Shown here piece by piece: positions 9,337 to 61,398 of a stretch of 64,000 nucleotides of DNA. The first letter of the stretch is position 1. Each line of letters begins with the position of its first letter. The notes beneath the pieces are model-generated. The model was not told where the DNA came from. It made no database searches and worked only from the letters and a program-made list of their open reading frames with translations. Position numbers and translations under genes: made by a program. Location of the stretch: positions 1 to 64,000 of the IMG/VR virus record IMGVR_UViG_3300047548_001236. One strand, written 5' to 3'.

Positions 9337-9339
9337 TTG

Positions 9340-9370
9340 TATTTATACTAGATCATGCTGAACAAGTCAA
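9340..9370 (-). promoter_or_regulatory. Overlapping sigma70-type (TTGACT-17-TATAAA) and T4 late (TATAAATA) promoter for tmRNA
   Basis: TTGACTTGTTCAGCATGATCTAGTATAAATA. Confidence 0.75.
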
Positions 9371-9500
9371 CCGCGATCGTATCTTCTTTGCTTTTCTTCG
9401 TAGGTGTCGTATCTTTCGGTCTCGCTTCCCATCAACTCCTCCTATGAAAAGAGGGGCTAACCATTGGCCCCTCACGAGTCTATTACGCGACCAGACGTAT

Positions 9501-16793: not shown

Positions 16794-17483
16794 TTATACA
16801 CGATTCTTCTCCAGGAATTCGTCAACCCAAAACGGAACAGTCTGTGTTGCAAGACCAATGTAATGTTCATCAAAGTCTTTGTAGTTTTCTGATTCTTTCA
16901 GATTGAACTCAATCGTCTGAGCTTTCTTCTTAGCCACATAAACAAAACCTGCAGCAGGATAGACGTTACCCGACGTGCCTATTGCCATGAAGATGTCACA
17001 ACGACGCAGCTCGTGATCGATGTCCAGCATATAGAATGGCTCTTCACCAAACCACACGATGTCGGGACGGACGGTCAACTCTCCACACTCGTAGCAAGGA
17101 TCGTTGACTGACATATGATCTGTTGCTAGTTGCTTATGGCCACAACATTCGCAGACAGCTTGAGCGAGGGATCCGTGCATATGGAGAACTTTTGACCCAG
17201 CTTTCTCGTGCAGGTCATCGACGTTCTGAGTTACGATTGTGACCTTATGTCCACTTTGCTGCAATTTAGTCAAAGCAAAATGTGCCGCATTCGGCTGAGC
17301 AGGTGCCGCGTCTTTACGACGCTGATTGTAGAAGTCCAATACCATCTGAGGATTGCGACGATACCCTTGAAGGGTGGCAACTTCTTCAATAGAGTAGCCA
17401 CTCCACAGACCGTCAGAATCTCTAAATGTCGGTATACCGCTTTCTGCGGAGATTCCGGCTCCAGTCAAAATCACTATATGCAT
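16794..17483 (-). CDS. cobB: Sir2/CobB NAD-dependent deacylase
   Basis: TGAGISAESGIPTFR, TQNVDDLHE, HMHG, RPDIVWFGE, GTSGNVYPAA. Confidence 0.93.
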   Translation of the reverse strand: MHIVILTGAGISAESGIPTFRDSDGLWSGYSIEEVATLQGYRRNPQMVLDFYNQRRKDAAPAQPNAAHFALTKLQQSGHKVTIVTQNVDDLHEKAGSKVLHMHGSLAQAVCECCGHKQLATDHMSVNDPCYECGELTVRPDIVWFGEEPFYMLDIDHELRRCDIFMAIGTSGNVYPAAGFVYVAKKKAQTIEFNLKESENYKDFDEHYIGLATQTVPFWVDEFLEKNRV

Positions 17484-18680: not shown

Positions 18681-18757
18681 TGGAGGTCGACCATGGACTT
18701 GAACCACGACCCCAGCTCTTGCAAGAGCTGTACATTAACCAATTTTGCTAATCGACC
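18681..18757 (-). tRNA. tRNA-Cys-like with 8-nt anticodon loop
   Basis: CAGCT-CTTGCAAG-AGCTG; U73; CCA. Confidence 0.7.
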
Positions 18758-21237: not shown

Positions 21238-21313
21238 TGGCGGCCCTGGTGGGACTCGAACCCACGACCATGAGTTTTAGAGGCTCTAGCTCTACCATCT
21301 GAGCTACAAGGCC
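21238..21313 (-). tRNA. Amber suppressor tRNA (anticodon CUA)
   Basis: Loop CT-CTA-AA, canonical D/T arms, G73, CCA; two mismatches in anticodon stem. Confidence 0.8.
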
Positions 21314-23399: not shown

Positions 23400-24355
23400 T
23401 CTACTTGCAACGGGGAGTACGAGGGGATTTGCACCAGGCCCCTGAACCTTCTCCTCTTTTCAGCTCCTCAGGGAAGGAGCCTACTTCTGCACCTTGCTTA
23501 CTCCGCTCTGGAAGTAGAATATTGTTGCGGGTGAGATTACCCCGTATTGTGAGCGCCTTTCCGATGTACCACATCCCTTGCGAGGAGTGTTGTCGGGTTA
23601 TCCACAAGAGTCTTTCGATCATCTTGTATCGCTCAGTGCTGCCGTTTTTGAGGTCTGGCTGTTGACCTGTCGCATGTTACTACTCGTCCGTCTTTCCTAC
23701 GCCTGCCTTGCGAGCAGCTCAGAGGCGCTAACCTCCTACGTGATCATTCTGAACAACTACTCTAGCCTTGCGAGCCTTCGTAGGCCTGATTATCTTTCGA
23801 CTCAGGCATTAAGCACCTTTCGTAACACACCGGAGCAGACTTTCGCTTTTTGAATCTATGTTGCTTTGAACCAAAATCAAACGCTAATTTAATAGCTGCG
23901 AACCTACTGAGAAGTGCTGCTCCAGTTGCTCCACACCTTGTTAGATGCAGAATACCACACTCCTCCTGTCTTTCTCCTTGCGGGATACTCAACGTCACTT
24001 CACGAATCCGGTGTGACCCTTCCTCGTTGATGATCCTACACCGCCCTTCTACGCGAATAGTCGGACTATGTAGACACCTGTTGGACTTTTCCATTCGTTA
24101 GTTTGGCTGAAAACTGTTTGGGCGCCAACCCTCTTACACCTCACCGATCGGCTCTGGTGCTATCCTTTCGGACAGTCTTCCTAACTTACTGGATACCTCC
24201 TAGCTTCTAAGGCTAGAAGGGACTTGCTTTCGGTTTAATCCGAGTCAAGTCTATCCCAGGCTTGTATGAATGGACCATTTTACTGGCGCAGGTATGTAGG
24301 AATCCCTGCTTTGGGTGTGTTACCACACTTACCCTGACGACGTCATACCGCCATT
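23400..24355 (-). ncRNA. Candidate large structured ncRNA (about 950 nt)
   Basis: No credible ORF, many hairpins, downstream of a promoter and boxA within the tRNA island. Confidence 0.45.
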
Positions 24356-34232: not shown

Positions 34233-34369
34233 AAATATGCTCCTGGTGGGAATTGAACCCACTTCGGTCTAGAAGTTAACTTCTCTCACTGGCTCACCAG
34301 CTCGTTCGACCTACCGAGTATGTTTCAACTCTGCATTTCCCTGTGTAGCGAACTGCACAGGCAGGAGTA

Positions 34370-34430
34370 TGTGTTTGGCTCTACCACCTAATTGGCGACT
34401 TAGCTTCGTAAAGGTTAACACGAAGTACCA
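34370..34430 (-). repeat. Three-way-junction leader motif, copy 1 of 4
   Basis: GGTA-stem-CTAAGTC-stem-AGAGCCAAACACA. Confidence 0.7.
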
Positions 34431-34435
34431 GTATT

Positions 34436-34747
34436 TCATTTTTGTCTTGCTTTTGCAAAACGTGCTTGTTGTCGCTTCCATGAACGATCAGCTTTTGCCT
34501 GTTCAGCAAACACATAAGCCTTGTGTTCTGCTACCCGTCGATCATACTCCTCTTCTGTTTCCAGTCGAAGCTCGAGAATGCCGATGCCGTTACTCCCCTC
34601 CAACACGATTTCATTATCGGGGTTAGCATCTTTCGTGAACTCTTCGATCTTATCGAGTAGATCTGAAACGGTTACATATCCAGTGTTGATCGTGGTTCCT
34701 CGTACTTCAATGATCCTACGATGTAATGCTTGTTCGAGAATACTCAC
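34436..34747 (-). CDS. Hypothetical protein
   Basis: AAGGAA SD; R.ETEEEY..R motif. Confidence 0.6.
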   Translation of the reverse strand: MSILEQALHRRIIEVRGTTINTGYVTVSDLLDKIEEFTKDANPDNEIVLEGSNGIGILELRLETEEEYDRRVAEHKAYVFAEQAKADRSWKRQQARFAKARQK

Positions 34748-34773
34748 GACAGATTCCTTTCATGAACATATTT

Positions 34774-34848
34774 TGGTCAGTCTGGCGGGGATCGAACCCG
34801 CGACCTCTAGGCTCCCGACCCAGCACTCTCCCGCTGAGCTACAGACTG
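34774..34848 (-). tRNA. tRNA-Pro(GGG) with C33/A37
   Basis: Loop TCGGGAG; C1-G72, A73. Confidence 0.82.
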
Positions 34849-34854
34849 ATGAAT

Positions 34855-34931
34855 TGGTCAGGGTAGTCGGATTCGAACCGACGGTCTCCGGAGTCCAGGT
34901 CCGGCACTTTACCAAACTAAGCTACACCCTG
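34855..34931 (-). tRNA. tRNA-Pro(UGG) with C33/A37
   Basis: Loop CCTGGAC; C1-G72, A73. Confidence 0.82.
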
Positions 34932-35092
34932 TTTATTTTACTCTACGAACTTTGAAGCTCTCAGTTGTCCAATCGCCTCTTTTCTTCCACTTCATTCTGA
35001 CATCGAACACCGATGTTGCCTCAATCGTTGAATAATATTCAAATCTGAACCCATTATTCACGAGAATCTCGAACATCGTGTGATCTTTCCTA

Positions 35093-35317
35093 TCAGAAGT
35101 ACACATGAAGGTTTTTGCTTACTTTGCCTTCACCTTGAAACAGCTCCGAACCAGTCAGGAGGATCGTTTCACCCTGTTCCGTCTTGACGGTAACAGAAAG
35201 GTCAGTACCAGCCTTGGTACGAACACTCTCAATGTGACCGTAGAACGGCTGGTCGTTGTAAACACCCGTGACAACCGAACCATTTGCATTCCACAGAGCG
35301 TTCATGAAGCTGTTCAT
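35093..35317 (-). CDS. Early hypothetical protein
   Basis: AAGGAG SD, sigma70-type promoter upstream. Confidence 0.65.
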   Translation of the reverse strand: MNSFMNALWNANGSVVTGVYNDQPFYGHIESVRTKAGTDLSVTVKTEQGETILLTGSELFQGEGKVSKNLHVYF

Positions 35318-35539
35318 CTGTCGATCTCCTTTGTTGCGTTCCTTTTAGCTGATTTGAACAGCCACGTCAACGCACAAAACAGATATTTTTGAAAAATTGC
35401 AGTAGCAGCGCTCGCTTAGCACGACGGGGTCGAAAGCTGTCATTAGACATCCTGCAAGTCGGTCTTATCCGCAAACCGTCACCCAACAAGGACAGCCCAA
35501 TATCGGAATGACGGCGGTCCTAGATGCTCTTGTGAAACT

Positions 35540-35623
35540 TGGTGCTGACGGTGAGACTCGAACTCACGGTGGGTTTCCCGACGGATTACAAAACCGTTCC
35601 AATCGCCGCTATGGGACGTCAGC
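35540..35623 (-). tRNA. tRNA-Thr(UGU) with long variable arm
   Basis: Loop TTTGTAA; GGGAAACCC variable hairpin. Confidence 0.75.
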
Positions 35624-35632
35624 ATATATTTT

Positions 35633-35770
35633 TCTGGATCAACTTTTTGCTGTATACTGTGCTGCTATTACACTAATCCGCCATAGTTAGATTTGGTGGC
35701 GGACCTAGGATTTGCACCTAGACTAGTCGTTTATGATACGAAAAGCTAATTTGTTGCTGGAATGATCCAT
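35633..35770 (-). tRNA. Circularly permuted tRNA-Met(CAU) in cassette 10
   Basis: 3' half 35694-35740, 5' half 35656-35682; stem GT|CGT/ACGAC, loop ATCATAA. Confidence 0.85.
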
Positions 35771-35777
35771 TATTGAT

Positions 35778-35856
35778 TGGAGCGGGCAGGGAGAGTTGAA
35801 CTCCGCGTTCTACGGCTTGGAAGGCCGCTGGTCGCCCCTTGACCTTGTCTACCCGC
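35778..35856 (-). tRNA. tRNA-Gly(UCC), atypical
   Basis: Loop CTTCCAA; U73; odd D arm. Confidence 0.75.
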
Positions 35857-35867
35857 ATTTTTTGTTT

Positions 35868-35943
35868 TGGTCGGGGTGGCCAGACTCGAACTGACGACTT
35901 TTAGTACCCAAAACTAACGCTCTACCACCTGAGCTACACCCCG
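35868..35943 (-). tRNA. tRNA-Pro(UGG)
   Basis: Loop TTTGGGT. Confidence 0.9.
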
Positions 35944-36323
35944 TAATGTACTTTTCTATGACAGTTGGAACACAAGACTATACACTTCTGTGCTTCCTCG
36001 TAAAAGAGGCGCCGTCCTCTTGCATCGCTCGGATGCAAGTCTTTAACGGTAGGATCGAGATGGTGCAGATCAAGTACCGCAGGGTGATTCTCACCACAGT
36101 GAGCACATCCTCTCGATACCTTATACTCTCTCACCTCATCGGCAAATTTATCTCGTGCCTTTTTACGTATTACGTCATACTTCTGTTTCTTTTTAGCCTC
36201 AGATAAAGCACTAAATGCGTTTGAGCACTTCTTACAATACCGTTGATAGCCATCAGGCGACTTCGCTTGTTTGTAGAAGTTACCCAACGGTTTAGTTTGT
36301 TGGCACTGTAGACACGTTTTCAT
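35934..36323 (-). CDS. HNH endonuclease whose stop codon lies inside tRNA-Pro
   Basis: CAHCGE..LDLHHLDP...KCIVLCSNCHRKVH; TATAAATA upstream. Confidence 0.88.
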   Translation of the reverse strand: MKTCLQCQQTKPLGNFYKQAKSPDGYQRYCKKCSNAFSALSEAKKKQKYDVIRKKARDKFADEVREYKVSRGCAHCGENHPAVLDLHHLDPTVKDLHPSDARGRRLFYEEAQKCIVLCSNCHRKVHYGV

Positions 36324-36468
36324 ACGAACCCCCGTTTTGGGGTATTTATATAAACCCGAATCTCACCATATTCTAACTGTAGGGGTCTGAATCCTACAGC
36401 AGAGAAGGAAAGGGATAATCGTCAAAGGCTCTACAGACTATAGCCTCGGATCAGTGCGCTATTCCTTC

Positions 36469-36750
36469 TTATTCTTCGTACTTGGCCACTCCGCGAATGT
36501 ATTGCCAGCCATACCAATGGCGACCAACACGCGAATCAGTAATACGGATGTTGTGATCTTCCGGATTGTGACCATGCTTCTTCATGACGTCGATCAGCTT
36601 CTGCAGCTCACCTTGTACGTCTGCTTCGGTCAACATCGCACCGACGTTCCGAGCGCCTTCCTTTGCACACGGGTTGGTGTAGCACTGCCACACTCCAATA
36701 CCGGCTTCGCGAAGCATCGAACGGAACTGCTTGGTGGTCATCGTCAGCAT
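36469..36750 (-). CDS. Early hypothetical protein
   Basis: AGGAG SD before MLTMTTK. Confidence 0.6.
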   Translation of the reverse strand: MLTMTTKQFRSMLREAGIGVWQCYTNPCAKEGARNVGAMLTEADVQGELQKLIDVMKKHGHNPEDHNIRITDSRVGRHWYGWQYIRGVAKYEE

Positions 36751-36828
36751 TTGAGATTCTCCTGTGCTTGTGTTAAAGCATATATACGAGATTGCTGAAC
36801 GCTTGTCAACCAGTTTCTTGAAAATAAT

Positions 36829-36913
36829 TGGTGCCCGTGGAGGGACTCGAACCCCCATGCTTTACAGCGCTTGGACCTAAACCAAGTGTGTCTGCCAATT
36901 CCACCACACGGGC
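36829..36913 (-). tRNA. tRNA-Leu(UAG)
   Basis: Class II cloverleaf. Confidence 0.93.
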
Positions 36914-36920
36914 TAAGCTA

Positions 36921-37187
36921 TCAATCTCTCATAGGATAGATGCCTTCGGTCACGATAAACTTCTTCACTTCTCCTTGACGCCAATCACGCTTGACACCAT
37001 GTTCGTCTAGCGGTCTCAGATCTGGTAAAGCAAAATCGTGTACAGCATCGCCACCGTATGTGATTCCCAATAGCGAGAAAAGTGCTTCGTTGTTTTTGAT
37101 TGGCAGCTTTCTACCATCACATGGTAGTGTGTACATAGGTGTCCATGTAACTGCCATTTCTAATATCGTACTGATGTACAATTCCAT
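36921..37187 (-). CDS. Stand-alone phage tail-collar domain protein
   Basis: CDGRKLPI..NEALFSLLG.TYGGD...FALPDLR. Confidence 0.85.
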   Translation of the reverse strand: MELYISTILEMAVTWTPMYTLPCDGRKLPIKNNEALFSLLGITYGGDAVHDFALPDLRPLDEHGVKRDWRQGEVKKFIVTEGIYPMRD

Positions 37188-37409
37188 TTTTCAATACCTC
37201 CATAACGCACCGTGCGTTGAGGTATTTATTAAGTGTTATACAGAGCCCGTCGCCACAACATCGACAGCATTATCTACATATTTTCGGCCGTGTAGTTATA
37301 GACTTGCGTCCTTAGGGTACATCATTACAGTTACTCGAAGAACCGCGTGTTCCTTTTACTACAGCCGCTAAACCGTAGCACCTTTCACTTACTGACACTC
37401 TGTATTGTT

Positions 37410-37485
37410 TGGCTGGGGATCCAGGATTCGAACCTGGAACCTGCGGTACCAAAAACCGTTGCTCTGCCAATTGAGCTAATCCCCA
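37410..37485 (-). tRNA. tRNA-Gln(UUG)
   Basis: Loop TTTTGGT; U1-A72. Confidence 0.9.
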
Positions 37486-37486
37486 A

Positions 37487-37924
37487 TCATCTCTTTGGAA
37501 ACTGATCTAGGTTCAGATAGCTGACTTCGACCGTTTCATCTCCTCTTAGCTTTGCGGCCATCACAGCATGATGGCCATCGTCGATGTAGTGCTTTCCTTT
37601 ATGTGTCACAACTCTGATATGAGTCGGTTTTGTCTCACCGATCTTCATTCTCAGCGTTTCGACATTCTCCGTTCTGACGAACGGCTGTGTCGGAAGCAAC
37701 TCTTCAACACGCATGTTTGCCTTTGTAAACATACCTCTATAGACCGAACGCGTCAGTTTTGCTTCTACACGCATTTCACGAACAGCAACGGACTCAACCT
37801 TACGAGAGTCAAATGCTGTCAGCGGAATGTGCATGCCTTTGACAACCTTTTCCCATTTACCAAAACGAGAACGTTTGCCATAACGGCGTGCTACACGAAT
37901 AGCTAGCTGAACGGGGTCTACCAT
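37487..37924 (-). CDS. ParB/Srx-like domain protein
   Basis: LLPTQ...YIDDGHHAVMAA. Confidence 0.7.
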   Translation of the reverse strand: MVDPVQLAIRVARRYGKRSRFGKWEKVVKGMHIPLTAFDSRKVESVAVREMRVEAKLTRSVYRGMFTKANMRVEELLPTQPFVRTENVETLRMKIGETKPTHIRVVTHKGKHYIDDGHHAVMAAKLRGDETVEVSYLNLDQFPKR

Positions 37925-37991
37925 AGCATTCTCCTTTGTTGTCCATATAGACGTGGCACAGTGAAAATGCAACGGTGTAAGAGGCCAATAT

Positions 37992-38068
37992 TGGTTGCGG
38001 GGGTAGGATTTGAACCTACGACCTCCTGGTTATGAGCCAGGCGAGCTACCAGACTGCTCTACCCCGCA
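37992..38068 (-). tRNA. Initiator-type tRNA-fMet(CAU)
   Basis: GCGGGGTAGAGCAGTCTGGTAGCTCG; ...CCCCGCAACCA. Confidence 0.9.
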
Positions 38069-38117
38069 AAAAATTCAGGTTACAGTTTGCTTTTATTAGC
38101 CCCGTAACACGGCTATT

Positions 38118-38205
38118 TGGCGGAGCGTCTGGGAGTTGAACCCAGTGGACCCTTACAGGTCCTACAGATTAGCAATCTGCTGCATTACCGTCCTGCCCAC
38201 GCTCC
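38118..38205 (-). tRNA. tRNA-Ser(GCU)
   Basis: Class II, loop TTGCTAA. Confidence 0.9.
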
Positions 38206-38215
38206 ATTATATAAT

Positions 38216-38291
38216 TGGTAGCCGAGGAGGGATTCGAACCCCCGACATTTTCGGTGTAAACGAAACGCTACTACCACTGAGCTACTCGGCT
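38216..38291 (-). tRNA. tRNA-Val(UAC)
   Basis: Loop TTTACAC. Confidence 0.9.
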
Positions 38292-38298
38292 ATATTCT

Positions 38299-38429
38299 CT
38301 GGATCAACTTTTTGCTACGCGTTCTATCTACTAAACTAACCCCTGTCAGTAATATGGTCAGGGGTGTAGGATTTGCACCTACGTCTCGATCTCCCAAAGA
38401 TATGCTAATTAGTTGCTGTAATGATCCAT
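38299..38429 (-). tRNA. Circularly permuted tRNA-Pro(UGG) in cassette 11
   Basis: 3' half 38355-38401, 5' half 38318-38345; stem CG|ATC/GATCG, loop TTTGGGA, C1-G72, A73. Confidence 0.87.
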
Positions 38430-38436
38430 CAGAATG

Positions 38437-38703
38437 TTATTTCTTCTTAGACTTCATCTTCTCTTCGTACCTAAACTTACCACTTCTGATGAACCAAGTC
38501 AAGTCTTTTGGCGTCACTTGTAAAGACATAGGGACATCAAAGTCACAATCTCCTGCATGGAAACCACACGAACAGTAGCTACCAGCTCGAATAGAACCGA
38601 CTTCATCGTTCTTCCAAGCTCCAACGTGCCGAATCTTAGTGTGTGTCTTTCCGATGGAATACTCATAGGTCTTTCCATCAACTTCAATCTTACGGTACGA
38701 CAT
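38437..38703 (-). CDS. Hypothetical protein
   Basis: AAGGAG SD, MSYRKIEVDG. Confidence 0.65.
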   Translation of the reverse strand: MSYRKIEVDGKTYEYSIGKTHTKIRHVGAWKNDEVGSIRAGSYCSCGFHAGDCDFDVPMSLQVTPKDLTWFIRSGKFRYEEKMKSKKK

Positions 38704-38749
38704 GTATATCTCCTTTACAGGGTGGCTTGGCAACATTGCCAATTGAATT

Positions 38750-38824
38750 TGGAGCGGGAGATGGGATTCGAACCCACGACATTTTCCTTGGCAAGGAAAC
38801 ACTCTACCCCTGAGTTACACCCGC
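38750..38824 (-). tRNA. tRNA-Gly(GCC)
   Basis: Canonical. Confidence 0.92.
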
Positions 38825-38924
38825 ATTTATATGCACATCCCCTACCTGCGATTGCACATCGACCAGTCTCAAACAAAAGGTCCTACCGACGTATCCTATC
38901 GCGCGAACTCGATACGTTTCTCAA

Positions 38925-39018
38925 TGGAGCCCTGAATAGGATTCGAACCTACATTTGCCTTTTACAGCTCATTCCAGTTACCTTTCTCGACGTTCGTAGC
39001 GTCGGGGGATACCAGGGC
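38925..39018 (-). ncRNA. D-armless tRNA-like RNA with ACG anticodon arm and long variable region
   Basis: GCCCTGG-TATCCCC-CGACG(CTACGAA)CGTCG...T arm-CCA. Confidence 0.65.
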
Positions 39019-39068
39019 ATGTTATTTCAGCCGGAAATTCTTTAGTCGGACGCCGGATCGCCTCTGTT

Positions 39069-39422
39069 TGGTGGACTGTATCGGATTTGAACCGACATTG
39101 TAAGGTTATCTGACACCAGATGGTCGTTACCGACATGGATTTACACAGGCCCCACGGTTACCGTTGTTTACTAGTCAACAGCCCATTGGTGCCTAAGTCG
39201 TACATGCTAAAGTCAGCAAGACGAACATAGGACTTTATCTTGGTGGATCTGACGGGACTCGAACCCGCGTAACTCTGCCTTGTGTACCCCTAACGAATTA
39301 AGGTGGCAGTGTGATTCCTCACGTACACTAACAGACCCATAATTTGGTGGAACAGGGAAGTCGTGTAGTCGCTCCCAGGCGGCCCATATTGGCCCCGCAG
39401 TTATACACTCTGCGCATGCCCC
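39069..39422 (-). ncRNA. Three tRNA-like RNAs with G3.U70 Ala-type acceptors and aberrant bodies
   Basis: 39069-39184, 39241-39338, 39345-39422; each GGG.../...TCC-A-CCA. Confidence 0.65.
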
Positions 39423-39433
39423 ATAGTTAACTT

Positions 39434-39509
39434 TGGTGGAGCCTATCGGGATCGAACCGATGACCTTCTGAGTGCAAGTCAGACGCTCTCCCAACTGAGC
39501 TAAGGCCCC
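39434..39509 (-). tRNA. tRNA-Ala(UGC)
   Basis: Canonical. Confidence 0.95.
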
Positions 39510-39618
39510 AAATAGTATAAACAGGTTCGACCGCGGCACTCCATCGAAGCTCCCCTACTGCCTAAATCCGCGGTACTTCAAACGGCATGTTCAGGGCTCA
39601 GTTTCGCCTGTTTATTAT

Positions 39619-39699
39619 TGGTGGAGCCACCGAGGGTACGATCCCGGCTGATTTCCGCATTGCAAGTGCGGTGACCACCCCATAGCAGTCCCTGGCCCC
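39619..39699 (-). tRNA. tRNA-Ala(UGC), atypical
   Basis: Loop CTTGCAA; variant D/T arms. Confidence 0.7.
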
Positions 39700-39938
39700 G
39701 AATTCATTGGGTATTTCTGTTTTTAACGTGGCGCACACCCTACGTCCACATCATACTGGTTCTCACGTATCGAACCGAATGTCGTCTAGCATTACGACCC
39801 CTGCTTTGCTTGTTGCAGCGCCTAGGTAGCTAAATCAAACGAGTATAGACAGGGCTGTTTGCAGCTTTGACCATGAAGGAGACTATGCTCAGCGACATGG
39901 GACACCCTCACAAGGGGTGATTACATCACTATCTATTC

Positions 39939-40012
39939 TGGCGACCCATAGGGGAATCGAACCCCTAACCTCGGATAGACAATCCGGTATGATACCACTT
40001 CATCAATGGGCC
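39939..40012 (-). tRNA. tRNA-Asp(GUC)
   Basis: Loop TTGTCTA; G73. Confidence 0.88.
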
Positions 40013-40019
40013 ATTTATT

Positions 40020-40095
40020 TGGCTCCCAGTGCAGGGCTCGAACCTGCGACCCGATGATTAACAGTCATCTGCTCTACCAACTGAGCTAACTGGGA
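40020..40095 (-). tRNA. tRNA-Asn(GUU)
   Basis: Canonical. Confidence 0.93.
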
Positions 40096-40392
40096 ACATT
40101 CTGCCCGTGCTGTCCACGCGAATCGGACTTAACCTTATGCGCTTTCTACTCTGCCGGCGGGCTTCGGCTAGCTGTATTCTAGTTGTAGCTGGTTTGACAG
40201 GGTTCAGGAGGCTTTACGGTGGCACCATCTCCGGACTTTATTTAACCACGTCCGCCGTTAGTCAAACTAGTTAGAACAAGAACGAGCCTTTTCAAGACAT
40301 GCTCAGGTCAATACTCGTTACTGTACTATTCTATTTATAGGGCAATCAAGTCTTATGGTTTCATCAACCCGCTTGATCTTTGTTTGATTCTT

Positions 40393-40623
40393 TTACGCTA
40401 CTTGCGTTTCCGTGTCAACCACTTTTTTACGCTTTTGCTTCTTTTGTTTTTCCAGAAGCCGTTTGGCTTGCAGCCGATCTTGTGCTTCCTGATCTTCTTT
40501 TTGTGAGTGTGCCGTTCTCGCGAACTTTGCTACTTGGCGTCGAAGTCGTGCTGCGATGGATCGCTTCCAACGTTCAGCTCGCGAAGGTTTTTCGATGTGG
40601 ATATCTACTTCTTCATCAGTCAT
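40393..40623 (-). CDS. Basic hypothetical protein
   Basis: GGAG SD before MTDEEVD. Confidence 0.5.
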   Translation of the reverse strand: MTDEEVDIHIEKPSRAERWKRSIAARLRRQVAKFARTAHSQKEDQEAQDRLQAKRLLEKQKKQKRKKVVDTETQVA

Positions 40624-40651
40624 GGCATTCACTCCATTATCGTTGTTGTTA

Positions 40652-40742
40652 TGGCGGAGCCGCAGGGATTCGAACCCTGGGGACGAAAAAGACGCCCACT
40701 GCCTTTCCAAGGCAGCGCGATAGACCACTCTGCCACAGCTCC
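40652..40742 (-). tRNA. tRNA-Ser(GGA)
   Basis: Class II. Confidence 0.92.
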
Positions 40743-40752
40743 ATAGTAATAA

Positions 40753-40842
40753 TGGCGGAAGCGGTGGGATTCGAACCCACGGAACGATTTCTCGTTCGCT
40801 AGTTTTCAAGACTAGAATCTTAAACCACTCGATCACGCTTCC
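40753..40842 (-). tRNA. tRNA-Ser(UGA)
   Basis: Class II. Confidence 0.92.
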
Positions 40843-40845
40843 ATA

Positions 40846-40994
40846 TGTGTTCGGCTCTACTAGCGGACGCAACTAGCGATTTAACTACAGTTTTGTAAAG
40901 CGTCTCTCTGTAGTACCATAATAGTCATTGGCTCTGGCCCGGAATGCGTGGGCGACTTAGCAGAGAGAATCTATACCTTCCCCTCTCTGTACCA
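40846..40994 (-). repeat. Three-way-junction leader motif, tandem copies 2 and 3
   Basis: 40846-40918 and 40928-40994. Confidence 0.7.
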
Positions 40995-41003
40995 GAAAAT
41001 TAT

Positions 41004-41621
41004 CTAAGGTGTGTAATTACGACACTCTGATAATGACTGTATGAATACAATATTTTTGTAGGTATTCATCAGAATATGAACTTTCTCTGTCTGCGCTTTG
41101 AAAGCAGCGGGATTTTTAGGGTCGAGATACACGTCATATTTTGGCAGATAAAAATCAGGAAAATAATTGTGAGTCACTCCTGCTGTATCTATCCAAGGTA
41201 TAGGGTCTGGCCTAACCCATTCGATATTCAGTTCATCGAGCCTTTGAGCAAGTGCTAGTTCCCACGATGAGTCTAACATAACACCCTTATATTCGACAAC
41301 CCCTTTTCGCAGTCTTCTGTGCTTTGATGCGAGAGCTTTTACTCTGGTTTTTTGTTTCGATTCATCTGTATGTTTTCTACCGAGAAATGTTCTATGATCG
41401 ACGTGATCATACACACCGTTTTTATGGTGTTCAGACACTTTTTCAGCAGCTCTTTTTCTACCCTCTATGGTTTTAGCATTTCTTGCTTTTTCCATATTAT
41501 TAACGTAGGCGTTTCTTTTAGGATTTGAGTCACACCATCTACTGTGATTAGCCATCCAACCTTTTGGTTTATCGTCTAGATCATATGTTGTGTTGCAGTG
41601 TTTGCAAGACCCTTGCTTCAT
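41004..41621 (-). CDS. Putative PD-(D/E)XK homing endonuclease with NUMOD3
   Basis: GRKHTDESKQK; DSSWE...YFPDFYLP...YLDPK; late promoter upstream. Confidence 0.75.
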   Translation of the reverse strand: MKQGSCKHCNTTYDLDDKPKGWMANHSRWCDSNPKRNAYVNNMEKARNAKTIEGRKRAAEKVSEHHKNGVYDHVDHRTFLGRKHTDESKQKTRVKALASKHRRLRKGVVEYKGVMLDSSWELALAQRLDELNIEWVRPDPIPWIDTAGVTHNYFPDFYLPKYDVYLDPKNPAAFKAQTEKVHILMNTYKNIVFIQSLSECRNYTP

Positions 41622-41674
41622 TATAGCCTCCTTTTGAGACTATTTATAAAACGAAGGCTCTCGTTCTATCCAAA

Positions 41675-41800
41675 TGGCGACCCCGGTAGGACTCGAACCT
41701 ACAACCTACTGATTAGATCGTGCCTTAGAAGATTCGCACTTCACTGGGCTTCCATACCCTCAGGCCAAGTCAGTTGCTCTATCCATTGAGCTACGGAGTC
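41675..41800 (-). tRNA. tRNA-Arg(UCU) interrupted by a 50-nt insert in the anticodon
   Basis: Removing 41717-41766 restores a 76-nt cloverleaf with loop CTTCTAA. Confidence 0.85.
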
Positions 41801-41804
41801 GCTA

Positions 41805-41868
41805 TGTGTTTGGCTCTACCTCTAGGAACAAAGGCGACTTAGCTGCTTTAACCGCCAAGCAGTACCGA
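41805..41868 (-). repeat. Three-way-junction leader motif, copy 4
   Basis: GGTA-CTGCTT..AAGCAG-CTAAGTC-GCCT..AGGT-AGAGCCAAACACA. Confidence 0.7.
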
Positions 41869-41874
41869 TATATA

Positions 41875-41951
41875 TGGTAGGGGATACCGGACTTGAACCG
41901 ATAACCTGCGGATTATGAGTCCGACGCTCTAACCAATTGAGCTAATCCCCC
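41875..41951 (-). tRNA. tRNA(CAU), Ile2 or Met
   Basis: Loop CTCATAA. Confidence 0.9.
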
Positions 41952-47733: not shown

Positions 47734-48630
47734 CTAGCGCCCTTCATATTTCTCTAATACTGCTTTCAGCTCTGCAATCATTCGGTCGACTGGAACCTCG
47801 CGTTTGACAGCATTGTCCAGAGAACCGTAATGATGCTCTAGGCAATTCATGAGAAGCTCTTTGACTGCTTCCTCGTCAGGGGCGTGCTGCAAGGTCGACT
47901 TGACGTACAGCTCTTCAAGATGCCTTTCAGCTTCGTTGAACCAATTGCGTAGCTTCTCCTCAGTCCATTCCCCACGACGGATCGATTTCAGGATCTCACG
48001 ATTCGCTTCGATATCAAGATCATGCTCGACAAGGATCTGCTGAGCTTCAAGAGCAAGTCGAACAACGTGATACGCAAACTTCACATCATAGCCAAACTCG
48101 TCGATTGAAGCCTGACGCTTTGGGTTCGAGGCATTAGCTTTCGTGCCGATCTTGTGAAGCTGAGCGTACGCGTATCCACGGAACTTGTGGTAGCTACCCT
48201 TATGGAGGAACAACTTGCGATTGTCTCGAACCATTTGCCCAATCTTCGATGCATACAGAACGCACCGTTGTGGGACAAACAAACTGTCGCACATGTTCGG
48301 GTTGTTTTCCATACACAGGTGGAAGTACTTCACGATCGAATAGATACTGAAATCGTATTCCTGACGAGCCTCAGCATCCATGATGTGGTGTTCCTGATAT
48401 TGTTCGAATCGCTGGATCTGTCGACCGAACCCAAGGATTTCTCCTCTTAGATGAGGGAAGACATCTTCCTTAGGCGGAATACAGAAACCATACACGTCCA
48501 TATCAGACGTATCGCTAGACACGCCATAGGCAACAGAACCCATGATCACCTCATAGTGAACATTCTGAGGCAGCCACTTAGGAGGAGCGATGAGCCCCTT
48601 TTGCTTCATTAGTTGAACACGAGATGCCAT
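47734..48630 (-). CDS. Pol-beta superfamily nucleotidyltransferase
   Basis: GSVAYG...SDMDVYG; NPN; YDVKFAYH..RL. Confidence 0.88.
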   Translation of the reverse strand: MASRVQLMKQKGLIAPPKWLPQNVHYEVIMGSVAYGVSSDTSDMDVYGFCIPPKEDVFPHLRGEILGFGRQIQRFEQYQEHHIMDAEARQEYDFSIYSIVKYFHLCMENNPNMCDSLFVPQRCVLYASKIGQMVRDNRKLFLHKGSYHKFRGYAYAQLHKIGTKANASNPKRQASIDEFGYDVKFAYHVVRLALEAQQILVEHDLDIEANREILKSIRRGEWTEEKLRNWFNEAERHLEELYVKSTLQHAPDEEAVKELLMNCLEHHYGSLDNAVKREVPVDRMIAELKAVLEKYEGR

Positions 48631-56471: not shown

Positions 56472-57065
56472 TCACTCCTTATTTTTACGGTTATCAAACC
56501 ATTGCTTCCATACTTTACGAGAGACTGTATCATACAGATCTTCATACCCTGTTTCAACCGCCTCGTCAGAACCGCCCAGCTTCACGTGAAACATAGCTGG
56601 AGCTCCATGATTTTGTTTGCAGAATGTTTCGGCTTGCTCGAGATTGTCTGCTATCTTCATCAACTCGTGCGAACCTTCGAAGAACTCGCCCTGCCAGTTT
56701 AGCTTGAGGCCATAGCAGATCACGTCGATCTCCCAGTAGTCGACCAACATAGCAAGATCCCACACCTGTTCCTTCGTCAGGAACTGGGCTTCGTCGATTA
56801 GTATGAAGTCGGGCTTGGGTTGGTTGGATTGAAACAACCGGAAGACACGAACGCTAGGAAGAATGTCTTTAGATACGATCACGCATTCTTCTTCAATCCC
56901 AAGACGACTTGAAATCGTGGTCGTCCGGTCGTCAATCTCGGGTTTCATCAGAAGAGTCTTAAAACCCTTTTGCTTAAGCATGTAGTTTTTGGTCAGTAGA
57001 CTCAAGCTCTTACCCGAATTCATGCTCGAAAATATGAACGTTAGCTTACACATTTCTTCTCCCAC
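56472..57065 (-). CDS. tk: Thymidine kinase
   Basis: SSMNSGKS, ISSRLG, LIDEAQFL, CYGL, FEGS. Confidence 0.92.
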   Translation of the reverse strand: MGEEMCKLTFIFSSMNSGKSLSLLTKNYMLKQKGFKTLLMKPEIDDRTTTISSRLGIEEECVIVSKDILPSVRVFRLFQSNQPKPDFILIDEAQFLTKEQVWDLAMLVDYWEIDVICYGLKLNWQGEFFEGSHELMKIADNLEQAETFCKQNHGAPAMFHVKLGGSDEAVETGYEDLYDTVSRKVWKQWFDNRKNKE

Positions 57066-57568
57066 TGCCCCATGATAGACATGGCATGCTTCATTTGTTT
57101 CATAAGGATACCGTTTTCGGAGTCACACCGAATCCAACGTTTGATTCCAAGAGTGGTGTTGAAATCGTAGTTGCTGTCGTCAAACAGCAAGAAGTCGTTA
57201 TAGGGTCCAAACTCTTTCAGATAGTCTGCAACCTCGACGGCACGACCATTCAGACGGTTGTATTTATCAAGCTCGTTCAACGGGTTGGTTTTCCAGTTGG
57301 GCCATGGGAATTTTCCCCGAAATCCCGCGTTCCTGAACGAAGAGTTGATCCAGTGGTAGTATACCGGATCGTCGTGTTTAATGTGGTTTTTCCACGTAGA
57401 AATCAGAACAAAGTCGACGTTGTAAAGATCGTCGATCTTGTTCATGAAATCGATGGCGATAGGATCAAAGCGATCCCACATCATGTGGTTAGTGCACGTG
57501 TGACCTAATTGCACACGTGCACTACAGAATACACCATCGATGTCGAGGAAGATTGCGTATTTAGACAT
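57041..57568 (-). CDS. HAD phosphatase (Swiss-army-knife RNA repair type)
   Basis: IFLDIDGV, LISTW, R..EV..YL, LFDD. Confidence 0.8.
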   Translation of the reverse strand: MSKYAIFLDIDGVFCSARVQLGHTCTNHMMWDRFDPIAIDFMNKIDDLYNVDFVLISTWKNHIKHDDPVYYHWINSSFRNAGFRGKFPWPNWKTNPLNELDKYNRLNGRAVEVADYLKEFGPYNDFLLFDDSNYDFNTTLGIKRWIRCDSENGILMKQMKHAMSIMGQWEKKCVS

Positions 57569-57784
57569 CTCACTCCCCAAAGAAACCAGCTTCGTAACCG
57601 TACACCATATATGCATCCTCAGCGCGTTTACTCCACAGAGCAATCGCAGCTTCGTTACCCGAAGCGACAGCAGCGTGCATCATCGCCAGGCAGAAGTCAT
57701 AAACGTTGCGCAGATTCATCAGCATTGGTCGATCTCCTTTGTTGAAATCAATATAGGCGACTCCTGTATGAGTGGCAACAGCAA

Positions 57785-58078: not shown

Positions 58079-58614
58079 CACTCTCTCCCGTGATGATCGA
58101 TCGGCTTCCACGTCTTCTTTTTCATGATTCGACGAACATCGTCCATATTCAGCGGCATGTAGTTGTGACAGTCGACGCCGACGTCGAAGCTCAGAGCGTT
58201 AGGATCGTCAGGTAGAGATCCATGGCTATGGCCATATAGCATCCAGGCACCATGGTGAGACTTATTCCACACGCGCATTGAGTAGTGGCACAGAACGATG
58301 AACTGGCCATCGATAGTCATTTCGTGGTAGTCCTTAATCCACTGCCACCCTTTCAGGCGACGTCCTACCTTGTCGTGATTGCCAAGCACAAGGTGCTTAC
58401 GACCATTGAGACGATCGAGAATCGACTGGCCCTTTTCTTGATCCATGAAACAGAAGTCGCCGACGTGAAACACATCATCGTCGACACCAATCCTGCTGTT
58501 CCAGTTCTCGATCATTTTTGAATCCATTTCTTCCTTGGATTTGAAAGGTCGATTACTGTATTTGATAATGTTGGCGTGCCCAAAATGGGTATCGGACGTA
58601 AACCATGTAGTCAT
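58078..58614 (-). CDS. Calcineurin-like phosphoesterase
   Basis: FTSDTHFGH, VGDF, GNHD, HY, YGHSH, DVGVD. Confidence 0.9.
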   Translation of the reverse strand: MTTWFTSDTHFGHANIIKYSNRPFKSKEEMDSKMIENWNSRIGVDDDVFHVGDFCFMDQEKGQSILDRLNGRKHLVLGNHDKVGRRLKGWQWIKDYHEMTIDGQFIVLCHYSMRVWNKSHHGAWMLYGHSHGSLPDDPNALSFDVGVDCHNYMPLNMDDVRRIMKKKTWKPIDHHGRE

Positions 58615-58806
58615 TTTGCTATTCTCCACAATCCATTCTCCACGGGCACATCGAAAGCATCAGAGTGGAGCAATCATCTTCACCAAAACACGGAGGTGGA
58701 GGTTGCTGTCTGAGCTTCCTGATCTGCTCGAAGAGTTCTTGTTGTTTTTGTTTGTTTCCTAGACGTTCCTGAACAACAGATTCGTCTAGCAATTGTTGAA
58801 TCCTGC

Positions 58807-59284: not shown

Positions 59285-59686
59285 TCATTCGATGCCGTCC
59301 AACTCTTTTTGCAGCTTTTCGAGTTGCTTCCGCTTGCGTTCCAGCTCTGTAGCCTTACGCTTTTCTTCGCGTGCAATTCGAGCCTTCTCTTCCTTTTCTT
59401 GCTGCTTACGCAGTTTCTCCTGCCGCGCTTCGTAAAGCTCTTTAGCCTTTTCCAAATGCTGCTCGACAGTCGATGGAGTAATCTCCTCAACCAATCGTAG
59501 AAGGTAATTTGCTTTTAGTTCGTACCGATATTGGTTAGCAAAACTGATCAACTTTTCTAGCTCAGCCACTCGTTTATCGTCCACCTCGTGCCAATCAATA
59601 CCGTCTGTGATAGTCCGAACAGTTTCGGTGCTTTCGTAGTCGTATTGCTCGTCACTATAGACTTTGACAATCTTAATTCGTCTCAT
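59285..59686 (-). CDS. Hypothetical coiled-coil protein
   Basis: ORF in operon. Confidence 0.6.
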   Translation of the reverse strand: MRRIKIVKVYSDEQYDYESTETVRTITDGIDWHEVDDKRVAELEKLISFANQYRYELKANYLLRLVEEITPSTVEQHLEKAKELYEARQEKLRKQQEKEEKARIAREEKRKATELERKRKQLEKLQKELDGIE

Positions 59687-60792: not shown

Positions 60793-61398
60793 AACATTAC
60801 TCTTAATTCTTGCGAATGGAAGGGACGAGTCGGCCAGTATACTGCTTACCGAATACATCAACGGTTGCAATTTGATTGTTGGCGTAACCCACAAGGAGAC
60901 CCTGGACGTAGGTGTTATTGTAGACGATGGTTCTGATCATGCGATGACCTCGTACACACGGTGATATTCACCGTCTTGATTCGCCCATTGTTTTGTTTTA
61001 CGAAGCACCCGCTGAGCATCTACCTTGACGCCAATGAACGTCACCATATTGTCGATCTCGTCGATTGCATCCTTGAGCTTATCGTTACGAGTCGATAGTT
61101 GGGATCCACCTTGGCAGGTCACCTCCACGACAAACTCATCATTGAAGTGTTTTGGCATCAGAACTTTATCCATATTACTGACCTTTCTGGCTGAGTTTGC
61201 GGATGACGATGTCACGGTTGGTGATGGCAGCGGCAATCTTCTTGATTGCATCTTCCTTGGATTCGTTATCCAGGATCATCTTGACGAATGCTTCATTCAT
61301 TTTGGTGGTCGTTTCCATGATCTTGCTCCTCATTTGATAAACAACATATAGAAGGTTCGACGGACGCAGTCAACAAAAAAAGGGCCGAAGCCCTCTTT

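What the first reader, a model, noticed from the sequence alone, without database searches (positions are those of the whole stretch)
34370..41868. Four-copy three-way-junction RNA motif, mostly just upstream of tRNA 5' ends
Seen: consensus GGUA-[P2]-YUAARUC-[P3]-AGAGCC(RAACACA) at 34370, 40846, 40928 and 41805. P2 and P3 vary freely but stay paired. The junction covaries (C-UAA-G vs U-UAA-A). Loops are complementary in several copies (GACGC/GCGTC, GGAA/TTCC, ACCT/AGGT). Three copies end within a few nt of a tRNA or tRNA-like RNA. Topology and junction lengths echo a type III hammerhead, but the core is not CUGANGA/GAAA. Inference: a candidate new self-cleaving ribozyme or processing signal.
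Basis: partly seen in the sequence, partly recalled or inferred. Interest (0 to 1): 0.85.

Follow-up and report, generated by a model that had tools for sequence, protein, structure and literature searches.

The report
New phage tRNA-array junction RNA
A small, sharply conserved three-stem RNA that is absent from Rfam sits in the spacers of tRNA gene arrays of uncultivated T4-like phages; it looks like a hammerhead-style RNA-cutting or processing module, but cleavage has not been tested.

Summary
Four copies of GGUAC-[P2]-G-YUAARUC-[P3]-AGAGCC lie on the minus strand, where 0.02 are expected by chance. More than 110 non-redundant homologues exist in viral and metagenome contigs. Every one lies in a phage tRNA array, on the tRNA strand.

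Covariation strongly supports P2, P3 and a Watson-Crick-only pair inside the junction (U:A 45, C:G 44, other 1). A few compensatory variants suggest that P3 extends into AGAGCC across a bulged A. The P2 and P3 loops pair in one subfamily, and the pairing covaries.

The motif fills inter-tRNA slots. It starts about 6 nt after an upstream tRNA 3' end, usually tRNA-Asn or tRNA-Met. It ends 9-13 nt before the next tRNA.

No Rfam 15 family matches, even at E<=10. Four of six literature searches were aimed at a description of the motif and found none. It was not found in the cultured phages searched, and only two small MAG contigs match among 185,579 species genomes.

The topology, the GUA triplet and the covarying junction pair echo a type III hammerhead, but the catalytic boxes differ, so it is not a hammerhead.

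Best reading (about 0.4): a new cis-acting, probably self-cleaving, processing module. Rivals: a protein-bound or stable small RNA, an RNase P punctuation signal, or an aptamer. Catalysis is untested.

The parts
41801..41866 (-). Copy D. GGUA 41866-41863; P2 hairpin 41862-41843; CUAAGUC 41842-41836; P3 hairpin 41835-41818; AGAGCC 41817-41812; A/C-rich tail AAACACAUAGC 41811-41801.
   Evidence: Pattern match. Best model hit in the window, 70.2 bits. Sequence read.
40843..40917 (-). Copy B. GGUA 40917-40914; P2 40913-40885; UUAAAUC 40884-40878; P3 40877-40859; AGAGCC 40858-40853; tail GAACACAUAU 40852-40843. The L2 segment GACGC pairs with the L3 segment GCGUC.
   Evidence: 63.7 bits. The loop-loop duplex scores -8.5 kcal/mol.
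40930..40993 (-). Copy C, in tandem 12 nt upstream of copy B. It is a divergent copy: the closing pair of P3 is G-C, the bulge is CA, and the AACACA tail is missing. L2 GGAA pairs with L3 UUCC.
   Evidence: 25.0 bits, E 8e-5. The same CA-bulge variant occurs in L256 and L272. A canonical relative with the same loops is L314.
34368..34429 (-). Copy A. GGUA 34429-34426; P2 34425-34404; CUAAGUC 34403-34397; P3 34396-34383; AGAGCC 34382-34377; tail AAACACAUA 34376-34368.
   Evidence: 65.5 bits.
41875..41951 (-). tRNA-Met(CAU). Its CCA end lies 8 nt upstream of copy D.
   Evidence: ARAGORN, Rfam tRNA 68.8 bits, distance.
41678..41800 (-). tRNA-Arg(UCU) with a 50-nt insertion in the anticodon loop. 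It starts 11 nt after AGAGCC of copy D.
   Evidence: Rfam tRNA 58.5 bits over 123 nt. ARAGORN in intron mode.
40753..40842 (-). tRNA-Ser(UGA). It starts 10 nt after AGAGCC of copy B.
34237..34366 (-). A 130-nt tRNA-like RNA directly downstream of copy A and 4 nt upstream of tRNA-Ala(GGC). It has an acceptor-like 6-bp helix and a T-arm, but no CCA.
   Evidence: Sequence reading. Only its T-arm matches tmRNA or tRNA models. ARAGORN does not call it.
41004..41621 (-). ORF of 205 aa with no Pfam hit. Its stop codon lies 10 nt upstream of copy C.
34436..34747 (-). ORF of 103 aa with no Pfam hit. Its stop codon lies 6 nt upstream of copy A.

Best explanation
The motif is a previously undescribed, phage-restricted structured RNA, transcribed as part of polycistronic tRNA-array transcripts.

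SHOWN. It folds into a compact junction with these parts:
- P1, 3 bp (GGU/GCC), invariant, ending in a U.G wobble.
- One linker nucleotide, A.
- P2, a hairpin of 4-9 bp.
- A Watson-Crick Y:R pair that closes an invariant UAA.
- P3.

P2 and P3 are of matched length, and their loops touch.

SUGGESTED by a few variants: P3 continues into AGAGCC through the pairs U:A and C:G across a 1-2 nt bulge, so that it would stack on P1 along one continuous 3' strand.

The module fills a slot between genes. It lies about 6 nt after a tRNA CCA end or an ORF stop, and 9-13 nt before the next tRNA.

INFERRED. It is a cis-acting processing module that most likely cleaves itself by internal transesterification at the strained junction. 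The likely site is at or next to the invariant GGUA|C step, by analogy with the GUA triplet of a type III hammerhead.

Cleavage there would sever the upstream tRNA or mRNA, leaving a trailer of about 10 nt that is unstructured and ends in a cyclic phosphate. Exonucleases, or the phage's own RNA-repair phosphoesterases, could trim that trailer. The motif itself would stay on the downstream tRNA as a 5' leader, which RNase P then removes.
For: - Reality and RNA-level selection. There are 4 copies against 0.02 expected and more than 110 non-redundant homologues. In 90 distinct sequences 98.3% of cells are paired against 79.5% in shuffles, and 9 of 13 pairs show double changes. Mutual information recovers only the P2 pairs, the P3 pairs and J1:J5. 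The invariant G.U and U.G wobbles work only on the tRNA strand.
- Ribozyme-like conservation. About 20 junction nucleotides are nearly invariant, while stems and loops vary freely.
- The Y:R pair never appears as a wobble: UA 45, CG 44. It switches inside the same loop families. C3:G8 of hammerheads covaries to U3:A8 in the same way (PMC3088659).
- Hammerhead parallels. The junction strands number 7, 3 and 1, there is a GUA triplet before stem I, and the loops of the two hairpins pair. Examples are GACGC/GCGUC, GAGCGC/GCGCUU and GAGUAC/GUACUU. Only 1 of 500 partner permutations gives a mean loop-duplex energy as low.
- P1 is only 3 bp and invariant, which would allow fast release of the product.
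- Context. Every copy is in a tRNA array on the tRNA strand, 54 of 113 lie 3-13 nt after a tRNA and 50 of 113 lie 6-20 nt before one.
- Precedent. HDV-like theta ribozymes are proposed to process the 3' trailers of phage tRNAs (PMC10879173).
- The window encodes enzymes that handle cyclic-phosphate and 5'-OH ends: RNA ligase, RlaP, a HAD_SAK_2 domain protein and metallophosphoesterases.
- A stable structure 6 nt after CCA would otherwise block 3' exonucleolytic maturation of the upstream tRNA (inference from established knowledge of bacterial tRNA 3' processing).
Against: - No cleavage data of any kind exist.
- The hammerhead residues G5, G8 and G12, which are needed for catalysis, are replaced, so the chemistry cannot simply be transferred.
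- In the refined model, UC pairs with GA of AGAGCC. That makes the junction less hammerhead-like.
- A cut at GGUA|C would not create a mature tRNA end on either side.
- The family is narrow, confined to one clade of aquatic T4-like phages, and is found only in tRNA arrays. Known self-cleaving classes are scattered over many contexts.
- From my own knowledge, not checked here: several tRNA-associated candidate motifs that looked like ribozymes did not cleave when tested.
- P1 has no covariation support, because it never varies.
Confidence: 0.4

Rival explanations
1. It is a stable small RNA or ribonucleoprotein module. The host tRNA machinery excises the motif, with RNase P cutting at the downstream tRNA and an endonuclease cutting in the A-rich upstream linker. 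The conserved junction then acts by binding a protein. It could be a recognition site for a phage-encoded RNA-processing or RNA-repair enzyme, or a decoy or inhibitor of a host factor such as a tRNA-targeting defence nuclease.
For: - The motif occupies slots like a tRNA gene, with short G-poor linkers on both sides.
- Copies are multiple and often tandem, as expected for gene dosage.
- An invariant core with variable stems also fits a protein-binding site.
- The phage carries an RNA-repair gene set typical of conflicts over tRNA.
- From my own knowledge: the T4 tRNA cluster co-transcribes two stable RNAs (species 1 and 2) of still unknown function.
Against: - No candidate partner protein has been identified.
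- There is a strong positional bias for sites right after tRNA-Asn or tRNA-Met, across many motif subfamilies. That suggests a cis role rather than a freely placed gene.
- A structured trailer 6 nt after CCA would hinder maturation of the upstream tRNA unless something cuts there.
Confidence: 0.3
2. It is a tRNA-like punctuation signal. The stack of P1 on the extended P3 (9-12 bp), capped by L3 and braced by P2, imitates the acceptor/T-arm limb and the elbow of a tRNA. RNase P would then cut immediately 5' of GGUAC. That would free upstream tRNAs or mRNAs with a trailer of about 6 nt, much as mascRNA-type elements do.
For: - The refined fold has cloverleaf topology. P1 corresponds to the acceptor stem, P2 to the D arm, Y-UAA-R to a vestigial anticodon arm and P3 to the T arm. 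The 3' strand runs continuously from P3 into P1.
- The first pair is G+1:C, and position -1 is a pyrimidine in 95% of copies.
- The leader before the motif (AAAACAY) resembles the leaders before true tRNAs in these arrays.
- The motif also follows ORFs at 6-10 nt.
Against: - P1 has only 3 bp, and the stack is usually shorter than the 12 bp that RNase P measures.
- L3 is not a T-loop, and no CCA follows P1.
- A mere RNase P substrate would not need about 20 invariant junction nucleotides or an invariant P1 sequence.
- No tRNA, tmRNA or mascRNA model aligns to the motif.
Confidence: 0.15
3. It is a ligand-binding aptamer. The three-way junction pocket, held together by the L2-L3 kissing contact as in purine riboswitches, would bind a metabolite or ion. 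Binding would tune processing or stability of the neighbouring tRNAs.
For: - The global architecture is that of purine-type aptamers: P1, parallel P2 and P3 of matched length, kissing loops and a conserved junction.
- The unpaired residues A14, UAA and the bulged A are invariant.
Against: - There is no expression platform, terminator or ribosome-binding site to control.
- P1 has only 3 bp.
- No Rfam riboswitch family matches.
- The context is always a tRNA spacer, never a 5' UTR.
Confidence: 0.08

Closest known systems
Type III hammerhead ribozyme (Rfam RF00008 and related families)
   Same: - Three helices around a small conserved junction, with the open helix carrying the 5' and 3' ends.
- Nominal junction strands of 7, 3 and 1 nt.
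- A G-U-A triplet just before the first hairpin.
- The residues matching C3, U4, A6 and A14 are identical.
- A Watson-Crick pair inside the 7-nt strand switches C:G to U:A, as C3:G8 does (PMC3088659).
- The loops of the two hairpins contact each other.
- Found in phages.
   Different: - The core boxes are YUAARUC and AGA(G), not CUGANGA and GAAA. G5, G8 and G12 are absent.
- The internal pair spans 3 nt, not 4.
- Position 15.1:16.1 is G.U, not A-U.
- UC probably pairs with GA across a bulge, where the hammerhead has sheared G.A pairs.
- No hammerhead covariance model matches, even at E<=10.
Theta (minimal HDV-like) ribozymes next to phage tRNAs (PMC10879173)
   Same: A small structured RNA placed just downstream of phage tRNA genes. 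Its proposed role is processing of the tRNA 3' trailer independently of host RNases.
   Different: - Theta ribozymes have a nested double-pseudoknot HDV fold and cleave at their own 5' edge.
- They come from gut phages of Bacteroidota and Bacillota and are linked to suppressor tRNAs.
- The present motif is a junction fold, in aquatic T4-like phages, linked to tRNA-Asn and tRNA-Met.
Purine-riboswitch-type three-way-junction aptamers (RF00167)
   Same: P1 plus two parallel hairpins of matched length, joined by a loop-loop interaction, with conserved junction nucleotides.
   Different: - The junction sequences are different.
- There is no expression platform, and the motif is not in a 5' UTR.
- P1 has only 3 bp.
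- No Rfam match.
tRNA-like processing signals and stable RNAs co-transcribed with tRNAs (mascRNA/MEN-beta tRNA-like RF01684; T4 stable RNAs species 1 and 2; the T4 case is from my own knowledge)
   Same: - Non-tRNA RNAs embedded among RNase P substrates or placed at transcript ends.
- They are released by the tRNA-processing machinery.
- Cloverleaf-like four-element topology.
   Different: - There is no T-loop, no 7-bp acceptor stem and no CCA.
- The anticodon arm is reduced to one pair plus UAA.
- Sequence conservation is far higher than a mere shape mimic would need.
- No model match.

Membership tests
Hammerhead ribozyme | Three stems enclosing a junction, with one stem open (type I, II or III) | tested here: met
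   P2 and P3 are supported by covariation and P1 is the open stem, although P1 has only 3 invariant pairs.
Hammerhead ribozyme | The conserved CUGANGA box between stems I and II | tested here: not met
   The strand is YUAARUC in 88 of 88 non-redundant copies that fit the core pattern. G5, G8 and A9 are replaced.
Hammerhead ribozyme | The conserved GAAA box between stems II and III | tested here: not met
   The strand is AGA followed by G (AGAGCC), which is invariant.
Hammerhead ribozyme | An NUH cleavage triplet 5' of stem I | tested here: met
   GUA precedes P2 in all copies. Whether it is cleaved is unknown.
Hammerhead ribozyme | A match to the Rfam hammerhead covariance models | tested here: not met
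   No hammerhead family hit at the gathering threshold or at E<=10.
Hammerhead ribozyme | Site-specific self-cleavage giving 2',3'-cyclic phosphate and 5'-OH ends | not testable with these tools
   Needs a bench assay.
HDV-like / theta ribozymes | A nested double pseudoknot (P1, P1.1, P2, P3, P4) with a catalytic C | tested here: not met
   The covariation-supported fold is a junction of hairpins. No HDV-family Rfam hit.
HDV-like / theta ribozymes | Position immediately downstream of a phage tRNA | tested here: met
   54 of 113 copies start 3-13 nt after a tRNA 3' end.
Purine riboswitch-type aptamer | Three-way junction with an L2-L3 kissing interaction | tested here: inconclusive
   The topology is the same. 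Loop pairing covaries in one subfamily, and overall only 1 of 500 permutations gives a mean loop-duplex energy as low. Many copies show only 2-4 complementary bases.
Purine riboswitch-type aptamer | Conserved junction residues, an expression platform and a 5' UTR location | tested here: not met
   The junction sequence is different, the motif is always in a tRNA spacer, and there is no Rfam hit.
Hairpin ribozyme | Loop A (N|GUC opposite AGAA) docking with loop B, and a match to RF00173 or the Hairpin-meta models | tested here: not met
   AAGUC and AGAG resemble loop A, but half of the copies have AAAUC, there is no loop B domain, and no Rfam hit was found.
tRNA / tRNA-like element | Cloverleaf with a 7-bp acceptor stem, a T-loop and a match to the tRNA models | tested here: not met
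   Neither ARAGORN nor Rfam tRNA calls the motif. P1 has 3 bp, and L3 varies in sequence and size from 4 to 26 nt.

The most novel reading that the evidence does not exclude
The motif is a new class of small self-cleaving ribozyme. Its fold converges on, or descends distantly from, the hammerhead, but it has a different catalytic core. A clade of large T4-like phages uses it to cut their tRNA-array transcripts without host endonucleases.
Probability: 0.35. Interest if true: 0.92.

Novelty: new variant of a known kind. Interest (0 to 1): 0.78.

Why it matters
Only about a dozen natural self-cleaving ribozyme classes are known. A new class with hammerhead geometry but different core chemistry would bear directly on how many catalytic solutions one fold can hold. 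It would also bear on whether hammerhead-like junctions arose more than once.

Whether or not it is catalytic, this is a well-defined new RNA family with more than 110 examples and strong covariation. It belongs to the poorly understood biology of phage tRNA arrays: how dozens of tRNAs, mRNAs and other RNAs are cut out of one transcript while the host RNA machinery is under attack or being subverted.

The module is short (55-65 nt) and self-contained, and its stems vary freely. It would therefore also be a candidate building block for RNA processing in synthetic tRNA or guide-RNA arrays.

Tried and rejected
- A loose collection scan returned 117 loci. None had paired P2 and P3, so all were chance hits and were discarded.
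- Single-sequence folding gave z-scores from -1.1 to +0.2, and in two copies the minimum-energy fold differed from the comparative model. Thermodynamics alone neither supports nor refutes the fold.
- The alternative pairing of CUA (junction) with UAG, suggested by the minimum-energy fold of copy A, was rejected. It does not explain the J1:J5 covariation.
- I looked for covariation between the A/C-rich flanks, and between the flanks and the core, and found none. The flanks behave as unstructured, G-poor linkers.
- Rfam 15 was searched at the gathering threshold over the whole window and at E<=10 around all copies. No family covers the motif.
- Six literature searches were run, including one on the core sequence strings. 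Four were aimed at finding a description and found none. The other two gave the hammerhead precedent and no description.
- Cultured phages: megablast of the array matched only single tRNAs. A sensitive blastn with copy D matched only chance sites in coding regions. The nearest cultured relatives are KVP40-like Vibrio phages, with topoisomerase 50% identical. One of them, ValKK3, has no copy in or around its tRNA array when the model is run with filters off.
- Canonical hammerhead cores with a paired stem II were sought in 92 motif-bearing loci. Only chance matches in coding sequence turned up.
- An Rfam scan of 13 related loci listed only tRNAs among its top 150 rows. The lower 66 rows were not shown, so weak hits there cannot be excluded.
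- Readings as a T-loop (UUAAAUC versus UUCRANY), a UAA/GAN motif, a pistol linker and tRNA D-arm similarity (GGUAGAGC) were considered from memory. I dropped them because they do not fit the covariation-supported pairs.

Full report
**Observation.**
All features lie on the minus strand, the strand of the 38 tRNA genes ARAGORN calls in the window; Rfam adds a few more. Read on that strand, the four copies follow GGUAC-[P2 hairpin]-G-YUAARUC-[P3 hairpin]-AGAGCC. Three of them then continue with RAACACAUA. The anchored pattern occurs 4 times, against 0.02 expected from dinucleotide-preserving shuffles.

A covariance model (R1) built only from homologues in other contigs finds these four and nothing else in the window with all filters off. 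The scores are 70.2, 65.5, 63.7 and 25.0 bits, and the next hit scores 9 bits. Single-sequence folding energies are not unusual, so the case rests on comparison.

**Homologues.**
- A first, loose scan of viral contigs gave only chance hits.
- Tighter anchors recovered about 45 structured copies.
- A complete scan with a strict core found 38 loci in IMG/VR.
- The same core plus two tail bases found 98 metagenome loci, nearly all confirmed by R1.
- Among 185,579 species-representative bacterial and archaeal genomes, only two MAG contigs of about 3 kb matched.
- R1 also found extra copies in the same loci that do not match the search patterns.

In total there are 113 non-redundant instances, 88 distinct P2/P3 combinations and 72 distinct loop pairs. 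Source contigs reach 283 kb and 519 kb.

**Secondary structure.**
On 90 distinct sequences, 98.3% of cells are paired against 79.5% in shuffles. All five P2 pairs and three of four P3 pairs show compensatory double changes. Sliding the partner strand by one to three columns destroys the signal (the seed alignment gave the same picture). A mutual-information scan over core and flanks ranks exactly the P2 pairs, the P3 pairs and one more pair at the top.

That extra pair joins the first and fifth nucleotides of the junction strand: U:A 45, C:G 44, other 1, and never a wobble. The two states alternate within otherwise similar loop families. Examples are L166 versus L143:4655, L285 versus L279, L240 versus L333, and L281 versus L272. 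The switch has therefore happened several times.

Rare variants suggest two further pairs. Where the U of YUAAR-U-C becomes A, the second A of AG-A-GCC becomes U. This is seen in L155:1217, L309:13627 and a copy in L234. Two copies have U.G at this position, and no mismatch is seen (UA 87, AU 2, UG 1). This rests on two or three sequences and is the weakest part of the model.

If it holds, P3 runs on through C:G and U:A across a bulge. The bulge is A in 71 copies and CA, AA, AG or GA in a few. Window copy C carries the CA form.

P1 (GGU/GCC, ending in a U.G wobble) never varies, so it has no covariation support.

The resulting picture has these elements:
- P1 stacks on the extended P3 along one continuous 3' strand.
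- A single invariant A links P1 to P2.
- P2 is capped at its base by the Y:R pair and the invariant UAA.
- P2 plus one pair and P3 plus two pairs are of similar length.

**Loop-loop contact.**
In one subfamily, L2 (AGAG-NNNC) and L3 (GNNN-CUU) form 5-7 pairs that covary: GACGC/GCGUC in window copy B, GAGCGC/GCGCUU, and GAGUAC/GUACUU. Over all 72 loop pairs the mean duplex energy is -2.44 kcal/mol. It is -1.70 +/- 0.21 when partners are permuted, and only 1 of 500 permutations is as low. Many copies have only 2-4 complementary bases.

**Context.**
All 113 instances lie in loci with tRNAs on the same strand.
- In 50 of them a tRNA starts 6-20 nt after AGAGCC (mode 10-11).
- In 54 a tRNA ends 3-13 nt before GGUAC (mode 6).
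- 76 have one of these neighbours and 28 have both.
- The upstream tRNA is tRNA-Asn(GUU) in 33 cases and tRNA-Met(CAU) in 11. This holds across many motif subfamilies and both junction types.
- Downstream tRNAs are diverse.
- Tandem copies are common, with linkers of 8-12 nt.
- Both linkers are A/C-rich and almost free of G. Position -1 is a pyrimidine in 95% of copies.
- Ordinary tRNA leaders in the window are similarly A/U-rich.

In the window:
- Copy D lies between tRNA-Met (8 nt upstream) and an interrupted tRNA-Arg(UCU) (11 nt downstream).
- Copies C and B follow an ORF stop (10 nt) and precede tRNA-Ser(UGA) (10 nt).
- Copy A follows an ORF stop (6 nt) and precedes a tRNA-like RNA.

The window comes from a large T4-like phage. 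It encodes UvsX, both topoisomerase II subunits, thymidine kinase, a tmRNA, a GOLLD RNA, an amber-suppressor tRNA and an RNA-repair gene set. Its nearest cultured relatives are KVP40-like Vibrio phages, at 50% topoisomerase identity. One of them, ValKK3, lacks the motif in its tRNA array.

**What it is not.**
No Rfam 15 family covers the motif, either at the gathering threshold or at E<=10. Four literature searches aimed at a description, one of them using the core strings, found none. Two more gave only the hammerhead precedent. Cultured-phage searches were negative. No canonical hammerheads occur in 92 motif-bearing loci.

**Comparison with the hammerhead.**
On the simple reading the junction strands are 7, 3 and 1 nt long, as in a type III hammerhead. 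A GUA triplet precedes the first hairpin. Four core positions match (C3, U4, A6, A14). The internal Y:R pair behaves like C3:G8, which covaries to U3:A8 in natural hammerheads (PMC3088659). The two hairpin loops interact.

However, G5, G8 and G12 are absent and the internal pair spans three nucleotides, not four. The A15.1-U16.1 pair is replaced by G.U. The refined model replaces the sheared G.A pairs with Watson-Crick pairs and a bulge. Two defining boxes were tested and not met, so the motif is not a hammerhead. It may still work like one.

**Mechanism.**
Shown:
- The motif is a selected RNA structure on the tRNA strand.
- It has an invariant junction.
- It sits in a fixed position in tRNA spacers.

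Inferred: it is a cis-acting processing module. I favour self-cleavage at or beside the GGUA|C step (confidence about 0.4), for five reasons.
- The conservation pattern is that of a catalytic or binding core.
- P1 is short and invariant and ends in a U.G wobble next to a single strained linker nucleotide.
- The geometry parallels the hammerhead.
- A stable fold 6 nt behind a CCA end would otherwise obstruct 3' trimming of the upstream tRNA.
- Phage tRNA-trailer ribozymes have a precedent in the theta ribozymes (PMC10879173).

The phage's ligase and phosphoesterase genes could deal with cyclic-phosphate ends.

Against this reading:
- There is no cleavage evidence.
- The catalytic guanines of the hammerhead are missing.
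- A cut at that site would create no mature tRNA end.
- The distribution is narrow.

Rivals are a protein-bound or stable small RNA released by RNase P and an upstream endonuclease (0.3), a tRNA-shaped punctuation signal cut by RNase P 5' of GGUAC (0.15), and a ligand-binding aptamer (0.08).

**Verdict.**
The motif is new to Rfam, and I found no description in the searchable literature. I file it conservatively as a new variant of a known kind, namely small junction RNAs of the hammerhead or processing type next to phage tRNAs. The chance that it is a new ribozyme class is about 0.35.

Noticed in passing
window 41678-41800 (-): A tRNA-Arg(UCU) is interrupted by a 50-nt insertion after nucleotide 34 of the anticodon loop. 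That is far too short for a group I intron. Related arrays carry an uninterrupted tRNA-Arg(UCU) at the same place after the motif. The phage encodes an RNA ligase and other RNA-repair enzymes that might take part in its removal.
   Followed up: partly
window 34237-34366 (-): A 130-nt tRNA-like RNA lies between motif copy A and tRNA-Ala(GGC). It has a 6-bp acceptor-like helix, a canonical T-arm and several internal hairpins, but no CCA. ARAGORN and the Rfam tRNA model do not call it. A related element follows the homologous motif copy in L287.
   Followed up: partly
L249 6713-6744; L143 4455-4486 (-); L234 6787-6818; L267 1036-1067 (-); L300 9396-9427; variants in L239 and L275: A second recurrent element of about 60 nt lies between the junction motif and the next tRNA in related arrays. 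It has an 8-bp outer stem (GCAAGAAG/CUUCUUGC) around a conserved interior (AACACGGCAG...GUAACGGUG). It is absent from the window.
   Followed up: partly
window 47737-48630, 57044-57643, 58081-58629, 59686-60894 (all -): An RNA-repair gene set is present: an RlaP-family nucleotidyltransferase, a HAD domain of 'Swiss Army Knife' RNA-repair proteins, a metallophosphoesterase and an RNA ligase (PF09414). This fits a phage that defends or rebuilds its tRNA pool.
   Followed up: partly
window 23528-23965 (-) and 8962-9374 (-): A GOLLD RNA (194.9 bits) and a tmRNA that matches the permuted and alpha-type tmRNA models lie inside the same tRNA-rich region.
   Followed up: no
window 21238-21313 (-) and 18681-18757 (-): There is a tRNA with anticodon CUA, an amber suppressor that ARAGORN labels Pyl. 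ARAGORN also calls a tRNA with a four-base anticodon (UGCA).
   Followed up: no
window 16797-17483 (-), 12135-13274 (-): A Sir2-family protein and a PLP-dependent ornithine/DAP/arginine decarboxylase are encoded among the tRNA genes.
   Followed up: no
L155 1217-1276 (+), L309 13627-13680 (+), L234 about 6730-6790 (+): A divergent subclass of the motif (GGUAU or GGUAC ... CUAAGAC ... AGUGCC) carries the compensatory U-to-A and A-to-U change. It may be a distinct functional variant or decaying copies.
   Followed up: partly
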